Of a stretch of 42,305 nucleotides of DNA, positions 10,700 to 42,000 are shown in pieces. The stretch lies in the NCBI GenBank assembly GCA_000388065.2, contig KB932204.1; one strand, given 5' to 3'. The DNA comes from Fonticula alba ATCC 38817. Lineage: Eukaryota > Protista > Nucleariida. The notes below the pieces were generated by a model. It was not told the DNA's origin and made no database searches. It worked only from the letters and a program-made list of their open reading frames with translations. Numbering within the stretch: the stretch's first letter is position 1; each line of letters starts with the position of its first letter. Made by a program: the position numbers and the translations under genes.

Positions 10700-11414
10700 A
10701 TGAACCCCGCCGAGTCGGCCTTTGTCACGGTGCGTTGATGGGGCGCCCGGTCTCCCTGCCCCCATTGGCCCATGTGCCCTCTCTACCTTGTCGGCCACTG
10801 ACGCCCGCCAGCACAGATTGTCAGCTCCGATGGTGTCCGATTCCAGGTGACCCGTGAGGCGGCCTGCTCCAGTGCCACCCTGGCCAGCATGCTGGGCGAG
10901 ACCGGTGCGTGTGGCCTCCCCTCCCGGGCCCCTTGCCCTCCCGCGNNNNNNNNNNNNNNNNNNNNNNNNNNNNNNNNNNNNNNNNNNNNNNNNNNNNNNN
11001 NNNNNNNNNNNNNNNNNNNNNNNNNNNNNNNNNNNNNNNNNNNNNNNNNCCTGCCCTTCCTTGAGCACCACACAAGCGAGATCTTCCTGCCGGACATTCC
11101 GTGCGTCCTGGCCTGCCTGCCTGCCATGTAATTGCCCGGGCTTTTCTCACCCCCGCCCGCTTCCCCCCTCGCCGCTGCGTGCCCGCGCTCTGCCCGGGCC
11201 GCGCACCGGCAGTGCGCACTCCCTGGTGACGGTCTTCCGTTTCGCGTATCAGAAAATGTCCTCCAACGTGGAGAGCGCCTCGGTGCCGAACCCGTCGCAG
11301 GCGTCGCGCTTTGCTTTCAGCCCGCCGGCGCAGGCGGCCGGCGCGGCGCCCTTCGAGGTCCCTGCCACCCGGCTCGGGTCGCTGATTCGGGCGGCGGACT
11401 TCCTGCAAATCTAG
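10700..11414 (+). CDS. ELOC: Elongin C (Skp1/BTB fold), 4 exons, intron 2 runs into an N gap
   Basis: Exons are 10700-10729, 10817-10904, about 11050-11100 and 11213-11414. The protein reads MNPAESAFVT-IVSSDGVRFQVTREAACSSATLASML...EIFLPDIPAHSLVTVFRFAYQK...PFEVPATRLGSLIRAADFLQI*. It is short and lacks the F-box-binding helices of Skp1, so it is Elongin C. Confidence 0.85.
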
Positions 11415-17940: not shown

Positions 17941-18180
17941 GAAAACTAAACAAGGGAACCTAAAGCACCAGGAAGGCTCACAATGTGTTACTTAAGCTAC
18001 TTTATGAAAAAACTGAATAGGATGTAAAAAATAGAGACAAGATAGTTTTTAAACAAATGATTCAACTAAATGCACAAAAGCAGGGCTTTTCTGCCATATA
18101 ATTGAGCAAGAATGTATGACTTTTGTGTAAATAATACGCATAATTTTATGGTGTCTCGGATTTATTTTGCCATTTTCTGT
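17941..18180. promoter_or_regulatory. AT-rich island, probable promoter or nucleosome-depleted region upstream of the Spindly-like gene
   Basis: A hand count gives 77 G+C in 240 nt (~32% GC) in an otherwise very GC-rich window. It lies about 200 nt upstream of the ATG at 18382. Function is inferred from position only. Confidence 0.4.
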
Positions 18181-18381
18181 TTGGCAGGCTTCAAGTTGCC
18201 CTCCCCTACTGCTTCCCAGTCCGGTTTCTCAGTGCCTTCCTCACCTTCCTCCTCCCGGCCTGTTTTTTTTCTCCTCGCCCTCTCCGCCCTCGCAACAGGC
18301 GATCCTTTTCCTCGGCTCTCGCTTTCCCCCCACGCGCTGAGTACCGCTCGCGTATTGCCATGCCTGGCTCCCCTCACACCT

Positions 18382-20472
18382 ATGACAATGAGTTTTGATG
18401 CCGATGCCCCTCCCGGCGAGCCGGCCTCCTGCCAGTGTGACTGGTTTTTCCGCTGCTCCTCCCTGGAGTCCAGTACGCAGTTGCTTGCGAGCCCCTTCGC
18501 CCCCTACTCTCGGCTGACCGCCCTTCTGACGACTTTCCTCCCTGCTGTTCGTACTTTCCCCCCCCCCCCCCCTGGCCAGAGCTCGTCCAGGCCGGTGAGC
18601 TTGGTTTGCAGTTGGTGGGCGACAATGAGACCCTGCGCCAGGAGAACCAGCAGCTCCTGGACCGGGTGAAGGCCCTGACCCTGTCGCAGGAGACCGGCGA
18701 CAAGGAGGTCGCATCTCTGCGTGGGTCACTGCGCCTGTCGCAGGAATCGCTGACCGCCTACGCCGACCGGATTAACCAGCTGGAGACCGAGCTGGCCGAG
18801 GTCCGGCAAGCCGGCACCGAGGCCGCCAAACAGCAGCGCACCGAAGCCGCGGCCCTGGCCACGCAGCTGGCCCAAGTGGAGCGGGAGCGCTCGGCCCTGG
18901 AAGCCGAGTGCGCCTCTCTTCGTAGCCGGGCCGGGCAGCTGGAGCAGCGTCACACCGAGCAGCAAACCCTGCATCGGGACGCCGAAACCCAGATCTCCCT
19001 GTTGGAGGGAGATCTGGCGGCCGTGCGCGAGGACCGCGATCGGCAGGTTGCCCGACGGGACTTGCAGATCATGGAAGCCGAGTCCCGCCTGGCGCGAACA
19101 TCACAAGCAGATGCGGCTCTGATTGCGGCGCTGCAGGAGGAGCTGGCGGCCGTGCGTGAGGCGGCCGACGTGGCCGAGGGCCTGTGCGCCGAGCTGGACG
19201 CCGAGCTTCAAACCGCTCGTGACAGCCTCAGCCAGATGGCCGACTCGCAGGCAACCGCGCAGCTGGAACTCCTGGGCGAGCGCAATGGCATCGGCATCGT
19301 TGGCGGCGTGCAGGACGGCTTCAGCATCCTGGCCGATGTCGATGACCAGCGCCGGCAGGTGGCCGAGCAACTGTCGGAATTGGCGCAGAAGCACCGGACG
19401 CTGGCGGCCGGGCGTGCGCGCGACGCCGTCAAGCGCTCGGCCCTTCGCAAGCAACTGGCCACCGCACGGCAGCATGCGGCGGCGGCAGCGGCCGCCGCCG
19501 AGGAGGCCAACCACAACGCCGCCGCGGCCGGTGTGGCGGCTGCCTCCCTGTCAGCCGGCCCGACCAATGATCTGCTCGTCGAGGAGGCGGCCGCGCTGCG
19601 CCGCGAGCTTGACCGATATGTGCGCGAGTCGCGTGTTCTGCGCGCCGACAATGACTCCCTTCGTGCGGAGATGGCGGCCTTCCGGCGGTCGAGCGCCGCC
19701 GCTGGCGACATCCGGGTAGGCGGGTCGCTGTCGCCGCTGCGCCCGGCGCGGGTGCTCGCCCCGCGCCCCGGGCCACTCCCGGCGGAAGGCTACCCCGCCA
19801 CCGGGTCGCCAGCCGTCGGCGGCACCTCCAACGCCCTGGACCACGAGTCGGCGGCATTTCGCCAGCTGGAGCGTGCCCTGCAGGCCGAGAAGAACCGCTC
19901 CACCTCGGCGCGCTTGGCCCTGGCCGCCGAGTCGCAGAAGGTCCGGAAATGCGCGAGAAAGAGGACCCCCGCCCTCACCTGCACCCTCTCCCCCTGCCAG
20001 CTCTGACACACGTGAACACCCTCGCTCCCCTCCGGCCCAGGTACGGTCCCTGATGAAGAAGCTTTCGCAGCTTGGCGGCGCTGGCCCGCTGCCGGGCACC
20101 CCGGTCGCGGCTGTCGCGACGCCCGGAACCCCGGGGCTCATGGCGCCCGGCACCCCGGCCACCGCCGGCAGTCTGTACCGGACTCCAGGGCTCCCGGCCA
20201 ATCGGTCGGCCCTTGGGCATCGCATCCGGCCGGACGCCGGGGGCCCGACAGACTCGCCGTCCACCGCCCTGCGCGGTCTGAGTCTGGCCCCGGCAGACAG
20301 CCCACCGACCGGCGGGGNNNNNNNNNNCATCCGGCCGGACGCCGGGGGCCCGACAGACTCGCCGTCCACCGCCCTGCGCGGTCTGAGTCTGGCCCCGGCA
20401 GACAGCCCACCGACCGGCGGGGAGGCAGAGTCGCCTCCCCTCCCGGCTGATGCCGACATGGCTGGAGCCTAG
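18382..20472 (+). CDS. Long coiled-coil protein with CC1-box-like and Spindly-box motifs (candidate Spindly / dynein activating adaptor), about 592 aa after removing a gap artefact
   Basis: Exons are 18382-18472, 18580-19940 and 20041-20472 (introns GTACGC..CAG and GTCCGG..CAG). The N-terminus has SLESKLVQAGELGLQLVGDNETL, followed by ~350 aa of heptad-rich sequence and GFSILADVDDQRRQVAEQL at 19317-19373. The tail is S/P/T-rich. Exon 1 is tentative. Confidence 0.7.
20223..20422. other. Assembly artefact: 95-bp sequence duplicated on both sides of a 10-N gap
   Basis: 20223-20317 is identical to 20328-20422, and the two are separated only by N10. This is a typical unmerged contig overlap. Removing 105 nt keeps the reading frame. 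Confidence 0.85.
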
Positions 20473-20477
20473 AGAGT

Positions 20478-20509
<32 letters not shown>

Positions 20510-20744
20510 TGTCTCGCCCTACCCTTCCCCGCCCTATAGACCTTCCCCCATGCGTCCCTGCCCGTCTCTGCTCTCCACTCGGACACCTTGGTCGCCCGCC
20601 ACGCCCGGTCGAACATCCCCATCTTGCTGCGTCGTGCGAGAAATGGAGGTTTGCTATTTTGACTGGACCCGGTGTGGCCGGCCTGGGAGGAGAGCCGGGC
20701 ACAGTTGGGGCATGGCCAGCGACGGGGCATGGCCAGTCTTCGCC

Positions 20745-22458
20745 CTAGCGATTGCCAGTGGTCGGAGCCTGCGCGGCCAGCGCGGCGTAGGCACCCTCGG
20801 CCTGGCGGAGCCGGCTGACGAGATCCTGCAGCTGAACCGGATCGGCGGTGAACGTGATGTTCTGGACGGAGGCCTCGTGCTCGGCGAAGGAGCCGCTCGG
20901 AGTCGTGGCCAGAAGGCTGATGTGGTAGCTGAGCCCGGCCTTGCTCTCAGTGTCGGGGGTGGTGTNNNNNNNNNNNNNNNNNNNNNNNNNNNNNNNNNNN
21001 NNNNNNNNNNNNNNNNNNNNNNNNNNNNNNNNNNNNNNNNNNNNNNNNNNNNNNNNNNNNNNNNNNNNNNNNNNNNNNNNNNNNNNNNNNNNNNNNNNNN
21101 NNNNNNNNNNNNNNNNNNNNNNNNNNNNNNNNNNNNNNNNNNNNNNNNNNNNNNNNNNNNNNNNNNNNNNNNNNNNNNNNNNNNNNNNNNNNNNNNNNNN
21201 NNNNNNNNNNNNNNNNNNNNNNNNNNNNNNNNNNNNNNNNNNNNNNNNNNNNNNNNNNNNNNNNNNNNNNNNNNNNNNNNNNNNNNNNNNNNNNNNNNNN
21301 NNNNNNNNNNNNNNNNNNNNNNNNNNNNNNNNNNNNNNNNNNNNNNNNNNNNNNNNNNNNNNNNNNNNNNNNNNNNNNNNNNNNNNNNNNNNNNNNNNNN
21401 NNNNNNNNNNNNNNNNNNNNNNNNNNNNNNNNNNNNNNNNNNNNNNNNNNNNNNNNNNNNNNNNNNNNNNNNNNNNNNNNNNNNNNNNNNNNNNNNNNNN
21501 NNNNNNNNNNNNNNNNNNNNNNNNNNNNNNNNNNNNNNNNNNNNNNNNNNNNNNNNNNNNNNNNNNNNNNNNNNNNNNNNNNNNNNNNNNNNNNNNNNNN
21601 NNNNNNNNNNNNNNNNNNNNNNNNNNNNNNNGGGTTAGCGCAAGCGGGCGGACGGGAGGAGGGAAGGCAGAGATCTTGAGGGGAAAGACCAGGGGCAAGG
21701 GGGGGAGAGACTCGGGCAGGGTCTCTCCCCGCGATCCGGGAAGCCTGGGCGAACCTTCAGGTCGTACTGGAGCTTCCAGTCGACGTCCACCAGCTGGGCG
21801 GTGCCAGGCGAGCCGGCCCCGGTGATGGCAGCCAGGCGCTGGCGGATGACACGGAAGTGCGCCGCGTAGACCGACAGCAGGATGTTGACGATGGCCTGCT
21901 CGGAGACGCCGACCGAATCGAGGATAGATCTTTCAGGGCCCCAAGGAGAGAAGGGGGGAGGGGGCGATAGTTGGCGGAGAGAGGAGAGTGAGGAGGGTGT
22001 GCGAGGGGGCCCGGACTGAAGGGAAGGCTCGACGTACGGGAAGGAAGTGTCGGTGACGTTGCGCTTGGCACACTCGGTGAACAGGGCGGTGATGCCGTAG
22101 AGGGCCTCCTTCAGCGCGGCGGACATTAGCCCCGGCTTGCCGGAATCCTTGAGGAATGCGATGACCTCGGGCTCCTGGAGGGGATCTATGGAGGTGGGGG
22201 GCGGAGGCGCACATTCATGGTCAGTGGCCGGGCACCAGGGGACACATTCAAAGGGCAAACAGGGCAAGGGCCAGGACAGGCAGGGGGGAGGGACGAGGGG
22301 AACGAACCATTGGAAGCCAGCCCCTGCGCAGGGACGTCCGCCGAGAGGGAAGTCGCGGCATTGAGAGAAAGAATGTTGATGATGTGCGGCTGCTTCAGGA
22401 AGTAGCGGTCGTTCGTCAGGAGGTTGAGCCCGGAAAGGGCAAGCGAGGAGAACTCCAT
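20745..22458 (-). CDS. COMMD3: COMM domain-containing protein 3 (Commander/CCC complex), at least 4 exons, last intron spans the 666-N gap
   Basis: Exons are 22458-22308, 22185-22038, 21929-21755 and about 20965-20745. MEFSSLALSGLNLLTNDRYF, LKEALYGITALFTECAK, QLVDVDWKLQYDLK and ITFTADPVQLQDLVSRLRQA align with the recalled COMMD3 motifs (MELSESVQKGFQML, HITDVSWRLEYQIK, ISFSCSMEQLQDLVGKLKDA). Confidence 0.85.
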
Positions 22459-39090: not shown

Positions 39091-42000
39091 CCTCGGTCTC
39101 AGCCCCCGGCCCGTCCTCCCGCAGGGGTAATCAGCGGACCGTGCGCCTTCTTCTGGCCCTGCCTCGAACTGCCCCCCCCAACCCGCTGAGCGGCGCATGC
39201 TCCCCGGGCGGCGGTTGTTTGTCGCCCCACCGGCGCCCCTGGCCTGGGGNNNNNNNNNNGGGGGTGCTGGCCGGCATTGGCCGGGTGTCTCTGTATACGT
39301 GTGAGCCCGCTGCCCGCCGGCTGGGGGCCCCTGGCCGGCGGCCGTCTGTCAGTCCCAGTGTCCGGTCGGCGTGCTTGCGGGGGGGGGGGGGCCGGGGCGG
39401 CGCGGAGTTTCTGGGAATCCCCGTGTGTAGAGTTGAGGCGTGTGTACGTGTGTACCGGTGTGCGTGCGTGCGTGCGTGCGTGTGTGTTTGTTGTGTGCGC
39501 GCTCGGGGCATGCGGTCTCCCGCACCCGGCGGCGGGGGCGAGGTCCCCCCGGTCGGCGGCTGGGTGTGTACCTGCGGGGATGGGCGCGCGTGAGCGGGGG
39601 CGTGCGTTGGCGCCTGCCGGTTGGCCGGGCGAGATCCGCGTTTCCTCATTTTCCGCCGCGGGCTGTCTGGCGATTTCCCCCCTCGGGTGTCTTGTGTGGG
39701 CGCGTGCGCTGGTGGGGGGTGGCCGGGCGGGCGGCCGCTTGACAACTCCCCCACGAGCGGGGCTTTGCCCGGCTCGGGGCGGAAAACCGGCGCCCCGGGC
39801 GGGCGGCCGGGCGGCCGCAGCGCGGCCCAGCGCGGGGACGCTCATCTCGCGGGGGGTTGCGTGCGCCGGCGCCGGTGTGCACATGCATGCGACGCCGCGG
39901 GTGCGGGGCCCCTCGCCCTTGGGCCGGGCCCAGTGCGAGGAGGGGGCACGAGGGCCCAGAGATTAATCCCCCCCCTGTGCGCCTTCCCCGATGAGGGCGC
40001 GCTGGGCCGGGTCGTGGCTCGGAGGGCGGCGGTGCGCTCCGGGCCGCGGCCTGCCGGTCCGCCCTCCTCCGGGGGGGGGGTGAGCTGTCTGCATGACGCG
40101 GCCGGCGGCGGCCGGCGGTTGTGCGGCCGCATCATCGGGCGCGAGCCTGGCGCCGGCCGAGGCGGCGGGGATTGCTCGTGCCTCGAGGGCGCCGGCGGCT
40201 TCATTCGGGGCGGCGGGGGGGGCCTCCGCCGGGTGTTCCCGCCGCCCCCGGGGCTGTGCGGGAAGGCCGGCGTGCTCGGCGGCACCGGGCTTGGTGCATT
40301 GCGGCGGTCATTGCCATGCCCCCTGCGTGTGTGCGCCGGGCGCGCCCAGGCTCCCCGGCCGGCGGTGAGACAGCCCGGCCGGGGGGACGGCAGGGCGCCC
40401 CTGATTAAGGACCTGCTGCGCGGGCGGCCCCGGGACGCGGTGCCGCCGGGGCACGGCCGGCGCCCGGAGGGGCGTATTAATCAGCGGGGACCGGCGCGCC
40501 CGGTGGTGGCCCCCCCCCCCACCCCCCAGGACGAGCATGGACGCCGAGATGTGTGCGTCTGCCTTTTGAGGTGTTTGCCGGCAAGGGAAGGCCGGGCGGG
40601 GGGGGGGGAGGAGGGGGGCGAGCGCATTCCCCACCGTGGGGGAACGACCCGGACCGGGGGAAGGCCGGGGGGCCCGAGAGAGAGAGAGACGGGTAGACCA
40701 GCTGCCCGGGAAATCCCGCCGGTCTCTGCGGCGGGCGCCCCCGCACCCGGGCGCGTCACACACAATAACAACAACAGTTGGGCGGCGCCCGGGCCGGAGC
40801 GCGCCCGGGGTGGGGGGAGGGGCAGGGTGTATGTTTTTTCTTACCTGCCGGGCCGCGGGCGACGCCGGCCAGAGCACGCGAGTTCTTTTTAGGGGGGGGG
40901 GGGGCGATGTGCCCTGCTTCGGTGCCCGGCCTCCGGCGGCGGCGGTGGGCGTGTGCGGGCGCGCGCGCCCGGGGGCCGAGCCCTTTCGGTTTGTGCGTGT
41001 GTGATGTTATCGCCGCGGAGGGGGGGGGGGGGGGCGACGGCGCAAACACCGGCCGGCGGGATATTGCCCCGGGGTCTGTTTATTTGTGTCGACCGTTTGG
41101 GGCCTCGGGCAGGAGGGCGAGATGGGCGGGGGGGCGCACATGAAACTGGCAGTCGCCGGTCCGGGGTGGGCTGCGCGTGCGCGCGCGCGCGCGGGGGAAG
41201 CCATGCCAGCGGCCTGGTGAGGAGAGGGNNNNNNNNNNCCCCCCCCCCCCTCCTGCGGTTCTCAATGTGCGCGCCCGTGTGAGGGGGACGCGCGTGTTTG
41301 TACCGGGAGCCTCTCGTTCCCGGCAAACTGAGGGCAGATGCTGGGAAAAGCGTCGCGCGCCGTCCCTCTTACTTCTGCCCCGCCCTCTATCCTCTGCCGT
41401 GCGCGCGCGGGGGGGGGGGAGGAAGACGCGCGCGCGCGCCGCCGGCCACGCCCCGCCAGCCGTAAATATATGCCGCCGCCGCCGCCGCACACATGGCAGG
41501 GGGGCACGAGAGAGAGAGCGCAGGAAGACACCCGCACCCTCTCGGGGGGGATATGAGAATGAAAGTGGATTCGATTATTTGGAGGAAAGAGGAGAGAGAG
41601 ATGACTGGTCAGATGGCTACTAGGCCGTAATTATCGCGTAACAAGAAGGTTGGGGGAACGACCTTCAGCATTGCATTGCTGCCTGGGCACGACCACTCTT
41701 CATTCCAGCTTTATACCAGGAAGGTATCATCTGTCGGGACTCCGGCGGCCAGCGGAGCGCCGGCAGCCGGGGGCCCTCTTGAACGGGGGCCCGGCCCCGC
41801 CCGCGGCCGTGTCCCGAGCTGGGTCCTCTGACAAATGTCATTCCGCGAGGGAGGGATCATGCCCTCGGGCCCGCCGGGCGTGATCTCGGGTTCATGGGGC
41901 TGGCAGCCGGCCGCCGAGCGAGCCGGCAGGGGGGGGGGGGGGGGGCGACGGCGGAGGCCCGGGGGGAGCGACCCCAAGGCCGGGCGGGTATTGTCCGGGC

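What the first reader, a model, noticed from the sequence alone, without database searches (positions are those of the whole stretch)
18382..20472. Candidate Spindly orthologue (kinetochore dynein-dynactin adaptor) in an apparently non-animal genome
Seen in the sequence: the spliced protein has ESKLVQAGELGLQLVGDNETL at residues ~29-49. This compares with human Spindly RLKAAQYGLQLVESQNEL, sharing GLQLV and showing AGxxG in place of the AAxxG CC1 box. About 240 residues later, through continuous coiled coil, it has DGFSILADVDDQRRQVAEQLSELAQKHRTL, versus human KGNSLFAEVEDRRAAMERQLISMKVKYQSL. Identities cover G, S, A, V, D, R, QL, K and L, and most other changes are conservative. Predicted length (~592 aa) and motif spacing are close to human Spindly (~605 aa; spacing ~230). 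Established knowledge: a CC1 box plus a Spindly motif define activating adaptors that bind the dynein light intermediate chain and the dynactin pointed end, and Spindly is recruited by ROD-ZW10-Zwilch to build the fibrous corona. Inference: this organism may have an RZZ-Spindly-dynein kinetochore module of a kind studied mostly in animals. The human sequences are recalled from memory, and I cannot check whether this orthologue is already catalogued.
Basis: partly seen in the sequence, partly recalled or inferred. Interest (0 to 1): 0.8.

Follow-up and report, generated by a model that had tools for sequence, protein, structure and literature searches.

The report
Divergent Spindly-like dynein adaptor in Fonticula
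A transcribed gene of the slime-mould-like fungal relative Fonticula alba, annotated only as hypothetical, carries the two short motifs that let Spindly-type proteins couple the dynein motor to dynactin, so it is probably a very divergent member of a family already known outside animals.

Summary
The window is Fonticula alba (Opisthokonta, Rotosphaerida). The gene is H696_02728, annotated as a hypothetical protein. RNA contigs confirm both GT..AG introns, so the CC1-like segment lies in the same transcript and frame as the rest.

The assembly gap sits between two identical 95-nt copies. 95 + 10 = 105 nt, or 35 codons, so the frame is kept. It affects only the disordered tail.

I built profiles from published Spindly orthologues only.
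- CC1 box: 16.3 bits.
- Spindly motif: 13.8 bits.
- None of 9,000 composition-matched decoys reached either score.

The motifs are 246 residues apart, and the predicted helix breaks just before the motif, as in human Spindly. Two softer searches also place Spindly near the top.

Several results weaken orthology:
- The conserved block after the motif is absent.
- The C-terminal block is only faint.
- There is no CAAX box and no canonical HBS1.
- Pairwise searches find no relatives.

My estimates are about 0.85 that it is a CC1-box dynein-dynactin adaptor and about 0.65 that it is a true Spindly orthologue. The presence of RZZ could not be tested.

Spindly orthologues in chytrids, Allomyces, Capsaspora and choanoflagellates were published in 2017, so this is a new member of a known kind.

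The parts
18245..18381 (+). 5' UTR. RNA contigs begin at about 18245. It contains a 12-codon out-of-frame uORF (18360-18398) that overlaps the main start codon.
18382..18472 (+). Coding exon 1. The first in-frame ATG in the transcript is at 18382; the annotation uses the ATG at 18388. It encodes a non-helical Cys/Trp/Phe-rich N-terminus and the first residues of the CC1 block.
18473..18579 (+). Intron 1 (GT..AG, 107 nt, with a 15-nt poly-C tract before the acceptor). It is spliced out in RNA contigs of runs X1, X3 and X4.
18580..19940 (+). Coding exon 2. It holds the main coiled coil with both motifs.
18591..18617 (+). CC1-box core AGELGLQLV (P0001 residues 33-41). The whole profile match covers residues 27-50 (18466-18472 plus 18580-18644). 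Predicted binding site for the C-terminal helix of the dynein light intermediate chain.
   Evidence: searches (16.3 bits; G37 and L40 invariant), PMC5379953
19314..19385 (+). Spindly-motif block DGFSILADVDDQRRQVAEQLSELA (P0001 274-297), directly after a helix break at residues 264-268. Predicted contact with the dynactin pointed end (p25).
   Evidence: 13.8 bits; R286 invariant; V282 and D284 nearly invariant
19941..20040 (+). Intron 2 (GT..AG, 100 nt). It is spliced out in RNA contigs of runs X1, X2 and X4.
19911..20070 (+). Faint match to the C-terminal coiled-coil block of Spindly orthologues (RLALAAESQKVRSLMKKLSQ, P0001 473-492). It spans intron 2.
   Evidence: 4.8 bits; 6 and 39 of 3,000 decoys reach it
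20041..20472 (+). Coding exon 3. It holds the end of the last helix and a Pro/Gly/Thr/Ala-rich disordered tail, with stop TAG at 20470-20472 and no CAAX box.
20223..20422 (+). Two identical 95-nt copies around the 10-N gap (20318-20327). This is a probable assembly artefact inside the tail. The annotated protein bridges it with an artificial intron (..STALR|DSPSTALR..).

Best explanation
H696_02728 of Fonticula alba encodes a dimeric coiled-coil activating adaptor for cytoplasmic dynein-dynactin. It is most likely a highly divergent orthologue of Spindly (SPDL1).

Inferred mechanism, by analogy with human and worm Spindly and BICD2:
1. The N-terminal CC1 box (A33-G34-x-x-G37) binds the C-terminal helix of the dynein light intermediate chain.
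2. The ~246-residue coiled coil lies along the Arp1 filament of dynactin.
3. The Spindly motif (S277-I-L-A-D-V-D-D-Q-R286), at the start of the next helix, docks on the pointed-end complex.
4. The C-terminal part (helices 356-403 and 445-494, plus a disordered tail) would bind cargo, which for a true Spindly is ROD-Zwilch at the kinetochore.

Shown here: the gene is transcribed and spliced as modelled, both motifs are statistically real and correctly placed, and the helix layout fits.

Inferred only: all binding partners, the kinetochore role and orthology.
For: - RNA: both introns are confirmed by spliced RNA contigs.
- Profiles: block profiles made only from published orthologues hit residues 27-50 at 16.3 bits and 277-297 at 13.8 bits. 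The per-sequence E-values are 3e-7 and 1.9e-6. None of 9,000 decoys reaches either score, and nothing else in the window does.
- Alignment: MAFFT placed concatenated published blocks on the same two sites on its own.
- Variant residues have precedents in catalogued orthologues. A-G-x-x-G occurs in zebrafish, and Ciona has the same A-G pair in its CC1 box. Leu at the Phe258 position occurs in chytrids and Allomyces. Asp for the central Glu occurs in Capsaspora.
- Spacing: 246 residues, against 234 in human and an average of about 260.
- Structure: AF2 gives helices 17-62 and 68-263, a break at 264-268 just before the motif, then a helix at 269-352.
- ESM Atlas: the best named cluster is Spindly, at 0.94 for the whole protein and 0.95 for residues 1-330.
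- Foldseek against Swiss-Prot models: Spindly of Xenopus and rat rank 5 and 7 of 550,129 entries, aligned from the N-terminus.
- Pfam: no BicD or HAP1_N match at E <= 10.
- Phylogeny: Spindly is documented across Opisthokonta, and Fonticula is an opisthokont.
Against: - Family blocks: true orthologues from animals to chytrids score 28-58 bits (block 3) and 23-55 bits (block 4) in leave-one-out tests. Fonticula scores 0.8 and 4.8.
- Motif scores: its motif scores are at or below the low end of the family range. For CC1 the range is 14.5-39. For the Spindly motif it is 20-39, apart from Coemansia at 2.1.
- Missing features: there is no CAAX box and no QxxH/Y about 30 residues after the CC1 box.
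- Pairwise searches: phmmer against 1.84 billion representatives and three word-indexed searches found only the protein itself. PDB searches found nothing relevant.
- C-terminal half: residues 255-500 have no Spindly-like features in the Atlas.
- Atlas caveat: the Atlas tool's own check (3 of the 10 best named hits share the family) warns that the family call may be wrong.
- Foldseek caveat: the E-values are weak (about 5e-3) and TM is about 0.1, which is meaningless for coiled coils.
- Other families: a CC1 box plus a Spindly-like motif also occurs in BICD, BICDL, HAP1 and TRAK.
Confidence: 0.65

Rival explanations
1. It is a real CC1-box dynein-dynactin adaptor but not a Spindly orthologue. 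It could be a lineage-specific family or an unrecognised relative of another adaptor family. It would carry non-kinetochore cargo through its unconserved C-terminal half.
For: - Only the two motifs shared by several adaptor families are clearly present.
- The Spindly-specific blocks 3 and 4, the CAAX box and HBS1 are absent or faint.
- The C-terminal half has no Spindly-like features.
Against: - The motif matches the extended Spindly form (S..[FL].[ED]V.D.R after a helix break), not only the 5-residue JxxE-phi core. That core occurs 7 times in this protein.
- There are no BicD or HAP1_N Pfam hits.
- Spindly, and none of BICD, BICDL, HAP1, TRAK or HOOK, appears among the top Foldseek hits; it is also the best named Atlas cluster, although a BICD2 cluster appears much lower there, at rank 65.
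- Bona fide fly and worm Spindly also lack the CAAX box, and by eye they lack alignable blocks 3 and 4.
Confidence: 0.2
2. It is a generic coiled-coil protein, and its two motif-like segments are chance resemblances with no dynein-related function.
For: - Pfam gives only sub-threshold generic coiled-coil hits.
- No detectable homologues exist in very large databases.
- Ala/Leu/Arg/Glu-rich composition favours spurious helical matches.
Against: - Both profile hits exceed all 9,000 composition-, locality- and heptad-preserving decoys.
- The joint per-protein probability from HMMER is about 6e-13 before order and spacing are counted.
- The motifs lie in the expected order, at the expected distance, and at the N-terminus and a helix break respectively.
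Confidence: 0.08
3. It is an assembly or annotation artefact: the gap or a wrong exon 1 creates a chimeric reading frame.
For: - A 10-N gap with duplicated flanks lies in the last exon.
- The annotated model bridges it with an artificial intron.
- No RNA contig covers 20309-20472.
Against: - Exons 1-3 are joined by spliced RNA contigs with no mismatches.
- Both motifs lie more than 900 nt upstream of the gap.
- The frame is preserved whether or not the duplicate is collapsed.
Confidence: 0.03

Closest known systems
Spindly / SPDL1 (CCDC99) orthologues of early-diverging fungi and unicellular holozoans (Batrachochytrium, Spizellomyces, Allomyces, Catenaria, Coemansia, Capsaspora, Salpingoeca; van Hooff et al. 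2017, PMC5579357 Dataset EV1)
   Same: - N-terminal CC1 box of the form L..[AS][AG]..G..L[LV]..N..L.
- About 230-300 residues of coiled coil.
- The motif [ST][LIV][FL].[ED]V.D.R. Leu at the human Phe258 position is shared with the chytrid Batrachochytrium, Allomyces, Catenaria and Coemansia, and Asp for Glu is shared with Capsaspora.
- A Pro-rich disordered tail as in Allomyces.
- Opisthokont host.
   Different: - It lacks the strongly conserved block after the motif (..RMK.QIA.L.Q....AD....RLE.AL.Q..).
- It has only a trace of the C-terminal block (..E[ST].K[LV]R..).
- It lacks the C-terminal C-x-x-Q farnesylation box, which all these orthologues have.
- Its scores are far below their leave-one-out range.
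Human Spindly (605 aa)
   Same: - GLQLV is identical within the CC1 box.
- Length is 592 against 605 aa.
- Spacing is 246 against 234 residues.
- The helix breaks just before the motif.
   Different: - A-G replaces A23-A24.
- Leu replaces Phe258.
- Asp replaces the motif Glu.
- There is no QEKY HBS1, no R295/K297-type CC2 segment recognised by the family profile, and no Cys602 CAAX box.
Drosophila and C. elegans Spindly
   Same: These are experimentally validated Spindly proteins that also lack the CAAX box. By eye they have little beyond the Spindly motif in common with other orthologues. They show that this degree of divergence is compatible with function. Fonticula shares VDDQR with the fly motif.
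   Different: Fly and worm keep GNS[LM]F with Phe. Neither the kinetochore role nor the RZZ partners are documented for Fonticula.
BICD2, BICDL, HAP1 and TRAK1 (other CC1-box adaptors)
   Same: A CC1 box, a long coiled coil and a short Spindly-like motif (for example LLSEL in BICD2) are used in the same way on dynein-dynactin.
   Different: - There is no Pfam BicD or HAP1_N match.
- The Fonticula motif matches the extended Spindly-type context.
- None of these families appears among the top Foldseek hits. In the Atlas only a BICD2 cluster appears, at rank 65, well below Spindly.

Membership tests
Spindly (SPDL1) family | Extended Spindly motif ([ST][LMV][FL]x[ED]VxDxR) at the start of the helix that follows a break in the coiled coil. 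The literature says this motif defines the family (PMC5379953). | tested here: met
   The profile of 10 published orthologues hits residues 277-297 at 13.8 bits, and 0 of 9,000 decoys reach it. The helix break is at 264-268. The match is weaker than leave-one-out scores of true members, which are 20-39 except Coemansia at 2.1. S277 is conserved, Phe258 is replaced by Leu as in chytrids, and Glu by Asp as in Capsaspora.
Spindly (SPDL1) family | CC1 box (AAxxG type) near the N-terminus. | tested here: met
   16.3 bits at residues 27-50, with 0 of 9,000 decoys reaching it. The leave-one-out range is 14.5-39. The A-G-x-x-G variant is also found in zebrafish, and the same A-G pair in Ciona.
Spindly (SPDL1) family | [quoted passage not shown] | tested here: met
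   A33 to L279 is 246 residues. AF2 predicts helices 17-62 and 68-263. The adaptor average is about 260.
Spindly (SPDL1) family | Conserved CC2 block downstream of the motif (human ~290-345, which includes the autoinhibitory R295/K297 segment). | tested here: not met
   The best score is 0.8 bits and lies elsewhere in the protein; nothing is found at residues 300-390. True members score 28-58 bits. The fly and worm proteins also lack it by eye.
Spindly (SPDL1) family | Conserved C-terminal coiled-coil block (human ~395-445). | tested here: inconclusive
   4.8 bits at residues 473-492, at the collinear position. 6 of 3,000 global-shuffle decoys and 39 of 3,000 local-shuffle decoys reach it. True members score 23-55 bits.
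Spindly (SPDL1) family | C-terminal CAAX (C-x-x-Q) farnesylation box. | tested here: not met
   The protein ends ..DMAGA. There is no C-x-x-x-stop in any + frame between 19900 and 20750. The box is also absent in Drosophila, Anopheles, C. elegans and Schistosoma Spindly. The end of the gene has no read support.
Spindly (SPDL1) family | HBS1 (QxxH/Y plus an acidic patch) about 30 residues after the CC1 box. | tested here: not met
   The only QxxH is at residue 157. A helix break (63-67) sits at the expected place. By eye the feature is not conserved in the fungal orthologues either.
Spindly (SPDL1) family | Full-length sequence or profile homology, or a reciprocal best hit, to Spindly. | tested here: inconclusive
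   phmmer and the word-indexed searches find only the protein itself. The local Pfam copy has no Spindly model: the first 76 residues of human Spindly get no such hit. The soft searches put Spindly first or at ranks 5 and 7. I could not bring full-length orthologues into the session.
Spindly (SPDL1) family | Co-occurrence with ROD and Zwilch, binding to ROD beta-propeller-Zwilch, and kinetochore localisation. | not testable with these tools
   No tool here searches the Fonticula genome or proteome with a query that I could reference. The literature held here does not mention Fonticula with Spindly or RZZ.
BICD and HAP1/TRAK families | Match to Pfam BicD (PF09730) or HAP1_N (PF04849). | tested here: not met
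   Neither is listed at E <= 10 for the exon 2 product, for the whole protein or for residues 1-330.
CC1-box class of dynein-dynactin activating adaptors (a functional class) | A LIC-binding CC1 box, a long dimeric coiled coil and a pointed-end-binding JxxE-phi motif, in that order. | tested here: met
   The core reads I-L-A-D-V, with Asp in place of the near-universal Glu (consensus). The dimeric state and the binding partners were not testable.

The most novel reading that the evidence does not exclude
Fonticula keeps a Spindly-derived adaptor that has lost the farnesylation box, the autoinhibitory CC2 block and most of the C-terminal RZZ-binding region. This would mean either a farnesyl-independent way of coupling dynein to kinetochores in the sister lineage of fungi, or a Spindly re-purposed for non-kinetochore cargo, possibly in a genome without ROD and Zwilch.
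Probability: 0.25. Interest if true: 0.5.

Novelty: new member of a known kind. Interest (0 to 1): 0.3.

Why it matters
If confirmed, this gives a function to a protein annotated as hypothetical that pairwise searches cannot place. It also adds the nucleariid/Fonticula branch (Rotosphaerida) to the map of the ROD-Zwilch-Spindly module. That module is thought to have arisen at the base of Obazoa and to have been lost repeatedly in fungi.

The missing CAAX box and CC2 block make it a natural test case. It could show which parts of Spindly are needed for dynein-dynactin activation and which for corona assembly.

It does not change the current picture, because non-animal Spindly orthologues have been in the literature since 2017.

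Tried and rejected
- Pairwise and word-indexed homology searches found only the protein itself. These used the exon 2 product, the motif region 266-320, and a mixed alignment of P0001 with published motif blocks. The exhaustive phmmer run against 1.84 billion representatives gave the same result. I therefore could not fetch Spindly orthologues as referenced sequences or build a full-length family profile.
- phmmer of the whole exon 2 product, the CC1 region and the motif region against PDB returned only designed helical proteins and tropomyosin-like noise.
- Pfam gave only sub-threshold generic coiled-coil families. The library lacks the Spindly model, as checked with the human N-terminus.
- A by-eye match of LRKQLATARQ (residues 317-326) to human MKLQIATLLQ, at the same +41 spacing from the motif, looked attractive. 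The family profile for that sub-block does not detect it, so I do not count it.
- A first MAFFT run with separate CC1 and motif fragments misaligned the CC1 fragments. I used it only as a source of the fragments.
- An alternative CAAX-bearing terminal exon was looked for and not found.
- An upstream in-frame ATG at 18112 was rejected because RNA coverage starts at about 18245.
- Literature searches for Fonticula together with Spindly, RZZ or kinetochore returned nothing relevant. The earlier notes of this scan returned nothing on RZZ or dynactin.
- TM-scores from the structure searches are meaningless for this coiled coil, so I did not use them.
Full report
**Identity of the locus**

The translation of exon 2 is 100% identical to one database protein, P0001. 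This is the 598-aa 'hypothetical protein H696_02728 [Fonticula alba]'. Its contig is KB932204.1 of GCA_000388065.2.

**Gene model and the gap**

- Reading the DNA gives exon 1 at 18382-18472, intron 1 at 18473-18579, exon 2 at 18580-19940, intron 2 at 19941-20040 and exon 3 at 20041-20472.
- Four small RNA runs from 2012 hold the locus. Their contigs skip exactly 18473-18579 (runs X1, X3, X4) and 19941-20040 (runs X1, X2, X4), with GT..AG ends and no mismatches.
- The CC1-like segment straddles intron 1.
- RNA coverage starts near 18245. The upstream in-frame ATG at 18112 is therefore not used, and 18382 is the first in-frame ATG. A 12-codon out-of-frame uORF overlaps it.
- The gap at 20318-20327 was tested first, as asked. 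The 95 nt on its left equal the 95 nt on its right, which is the signature of an unmerged overlap.
- One copy plus the gap is 105 nt, or 35 codons.
- The annotated P0001 instead bridges the gap with an artificial intron.
- No RNA contig crosses the gap, so the last ~55 codons are unsupported. They lie in a disordered tail more than 280 residues after the motifs.

**Are the motifs real?**

I took short blocks from ten published Spindly orthologues each, spanning animals, a choanoflagellate, Capsaspora and five early-diverging fungi. I built profile HMMs from them without the Fonticula sequence.

| Block | Position in P0001 | Score | Per-sequence E-value |
|---|---|---|---|
| CC1 | 27-50 | 16.3 bits | 3e-7 |
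| Spindly motif | 277-297 | 13.8 bits | 1.9e-6 |

- None of 3,000 global, 3,000 local-window or 3,000 heptad-preserving shuffles reached either score. The decoy maxima were 9.7 and 12.0.
- In 61,908 aa of six-frame translation of the same GC-rich window, the next best scores were 5.1 and 2.1.
- MAFFT placed concatenated published blocks on the same two sites. G37, L40 and R286 were invariant.
- Chance is therefore excluded for practical purposes.
- The short core alone (JxxE-phi) is not informative, since it occurs seven times in this protein. The extended Spindly-type context carries the signal.

**Anatomy**

An AF2 single-sequence model (mean pLDDT 63) predicts:
- a disordered segment at 1-16;
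- helices at 17-62 and 68-263;
- a break at 264-268 immediately before the motif;
- helices at 269-352, 356-403 and 445-494;
- a disordered tail from 495.

The distance from the CC1 box to the motif is 246 residues, against 234 in human. Gama et al. report about 260 on average for adaptors, with the motif at the pointed end and the CC1 box at the barbed end of dynactin.

The deviating residues all have precedents in catalogued orthologues:
- A-G-x-x-G occurs in zebrafish, and Ciona has the same A-G pair in its CC1 box.
- Leu at the Phe258 position occurs in Batrachochytrium, Allomyces and Catenaria.
- Asp for the central Glu occurs in Capsaspora.

**Is it Spindly or just Spindly-like?**

Two further blocks are conserved from human to chytrids, and I tested both.
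- The block after the motif (human ~290-345, including the autoinhibitory R295/K297 segment of d'Amico et al.) is not found. Fonticula scores 0.8 bits, while true members score 28-58 bits in leave-one-out tests.
- The C-terminal coiled-coil block gives a faint hit at the collinear position: 4.8 bits at residues 473-492. This is reached by 6 of 3,000 global and 39 of 3,000 local decoys. True members score 23-55 bits.

Other negative or neutral results:
- The CAAX box carried by the chytrid, Allomyces, Catenaria, Coemansia, Capsaspora and choanoflagellate orthologues in the published set is absent.
- There is no QxxH/Y HBS1 at the usual place.
- Pairwise searches find no relative at all, and PDB searches are empty.
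- Pfam shows no BicD or HAP1_N match.
- Pfam cannot speak about Spindly, because the local copy lacks that model.

Results in favour of Spindly:
- The ESM Atlas feature search puts Spindly clusters first among named clusters, at 0.94 for the whole protein and 0.95 for residues 1-330. The tool's own consistency check is poor for the partial query, and residues 255-500 show nothing.
- Foldseek of the model against Swiss-Prot AlphaFold models ranks Xenopus and rat Spindly 5th and 7th of 550,129, aligned from the N-terminus. The E-values are weak.
- Fly and worm Spindly, which are experimentally validated, also lack the CAAX box. By eye they also lack blocks 3 and 4. These absences therefore lower the orthology claim but do not refute it.

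**Verdict on mechanism**

I commit to a CC1-box dynein-dynactin activating adaptor at about 0.85, and most likely a very divergent Spindly orthologue at about 0.65. Binding to LIC, the pointed end and RZZ is inferred from the human, worm and BICD2 work, not shown here. ROD, Zwilch, ZW10, LIC and the pointed-end subunits could not be searched for in this genome with the available tools, so the kinetochore module remains untested.

**Comparison with what is known**

- Van Hooff et al. 2017 published Spindly orthologues from Batrachochytrium, Spizellomyces, Allomyces, Catenaria, Coemansia, Capsaspora, Monosiga and Salpingoeca. They described a Rod-Zwilch-Spindly co-evolving module.
- Wu et al. 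2023 place the origin of Spindly at the base of Obazoa.
- Fonticula is absent from the 2017 data files. No paper held here mentions it with Spindly. I could not read the 2023 figshare tables.
- This is therefore a new, unusually divergent member of a known family in an expected lineage. It is of modest interest, mainly for its missing CAAX and CC2 features.

**Limits**

- The family blocks were typed as short strings.
- Shuffled decoys are a weaker null than a real proteome of coiled-coil proteins.

Noticed in passing
window 18360-18398: A 12-codon upstream ORF (MPGSPHTYDNEF*) lies in the 5' UTR, out of frame, and overlaps both candidate start codons (18382 and 18388). It may dampen translation.
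   Followed up: partly
window 18558-18572, 20480-20508 and about 30 other sites: There are 33 poly-C or poly-G runs of 12-29 nt in 42 kb. In this gene they are poly-C on the sense strand, one just before the intron 1 acceptor and one right after the stop codon. RNA contigs break at the 29-nt run. This looks like a genome-wide habit of Fonticula non-coding DNA.
   Followed up: no
window 20223-20422; also the 10-N gaps at 39250-39259 and 41229-41238: The 10-N gap in this gene is flanked by identical 95-nt copies, and the public annotation bridges it with an artificial intron. The other 10-N gaps in the window may be the same kind of unmerged overlap and may distort other gene models.
   Followed up: partly
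window about 20637-22458, minus strand: The convergent neighbour (222-aa product, no Pfam family) is transcribed at about 5-8 times the word depth of this gene. Its 3' end comes within about 165 nt of this gene's stop codon. A 666-N gap (20966-21631) sits inside it.
   Followed up: no
window up to about 10130 on the minus strand, and about 10700-11414 on the plus strand (L001 1-1743 and 2313-3027): An APC1 gene (anaphase-promoting complex subunit 1, 2,626 aa) and a weak Skp1_POZ gene lie about 7-8 kb upstream of the candidate Spindly. They are cell-cycle genes, and the proximity is probably coincidental.
   Followed up: no
P0001 residues 327-352: An alanine-rich low-complexity stretch (AAAAAAAAEEANHNAAAAGVAAA) sits where other Spindly orthologues have their most conserved post-motif block. 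An insertion or replacement there may explain why that block is not detected.
   Followed up: partly
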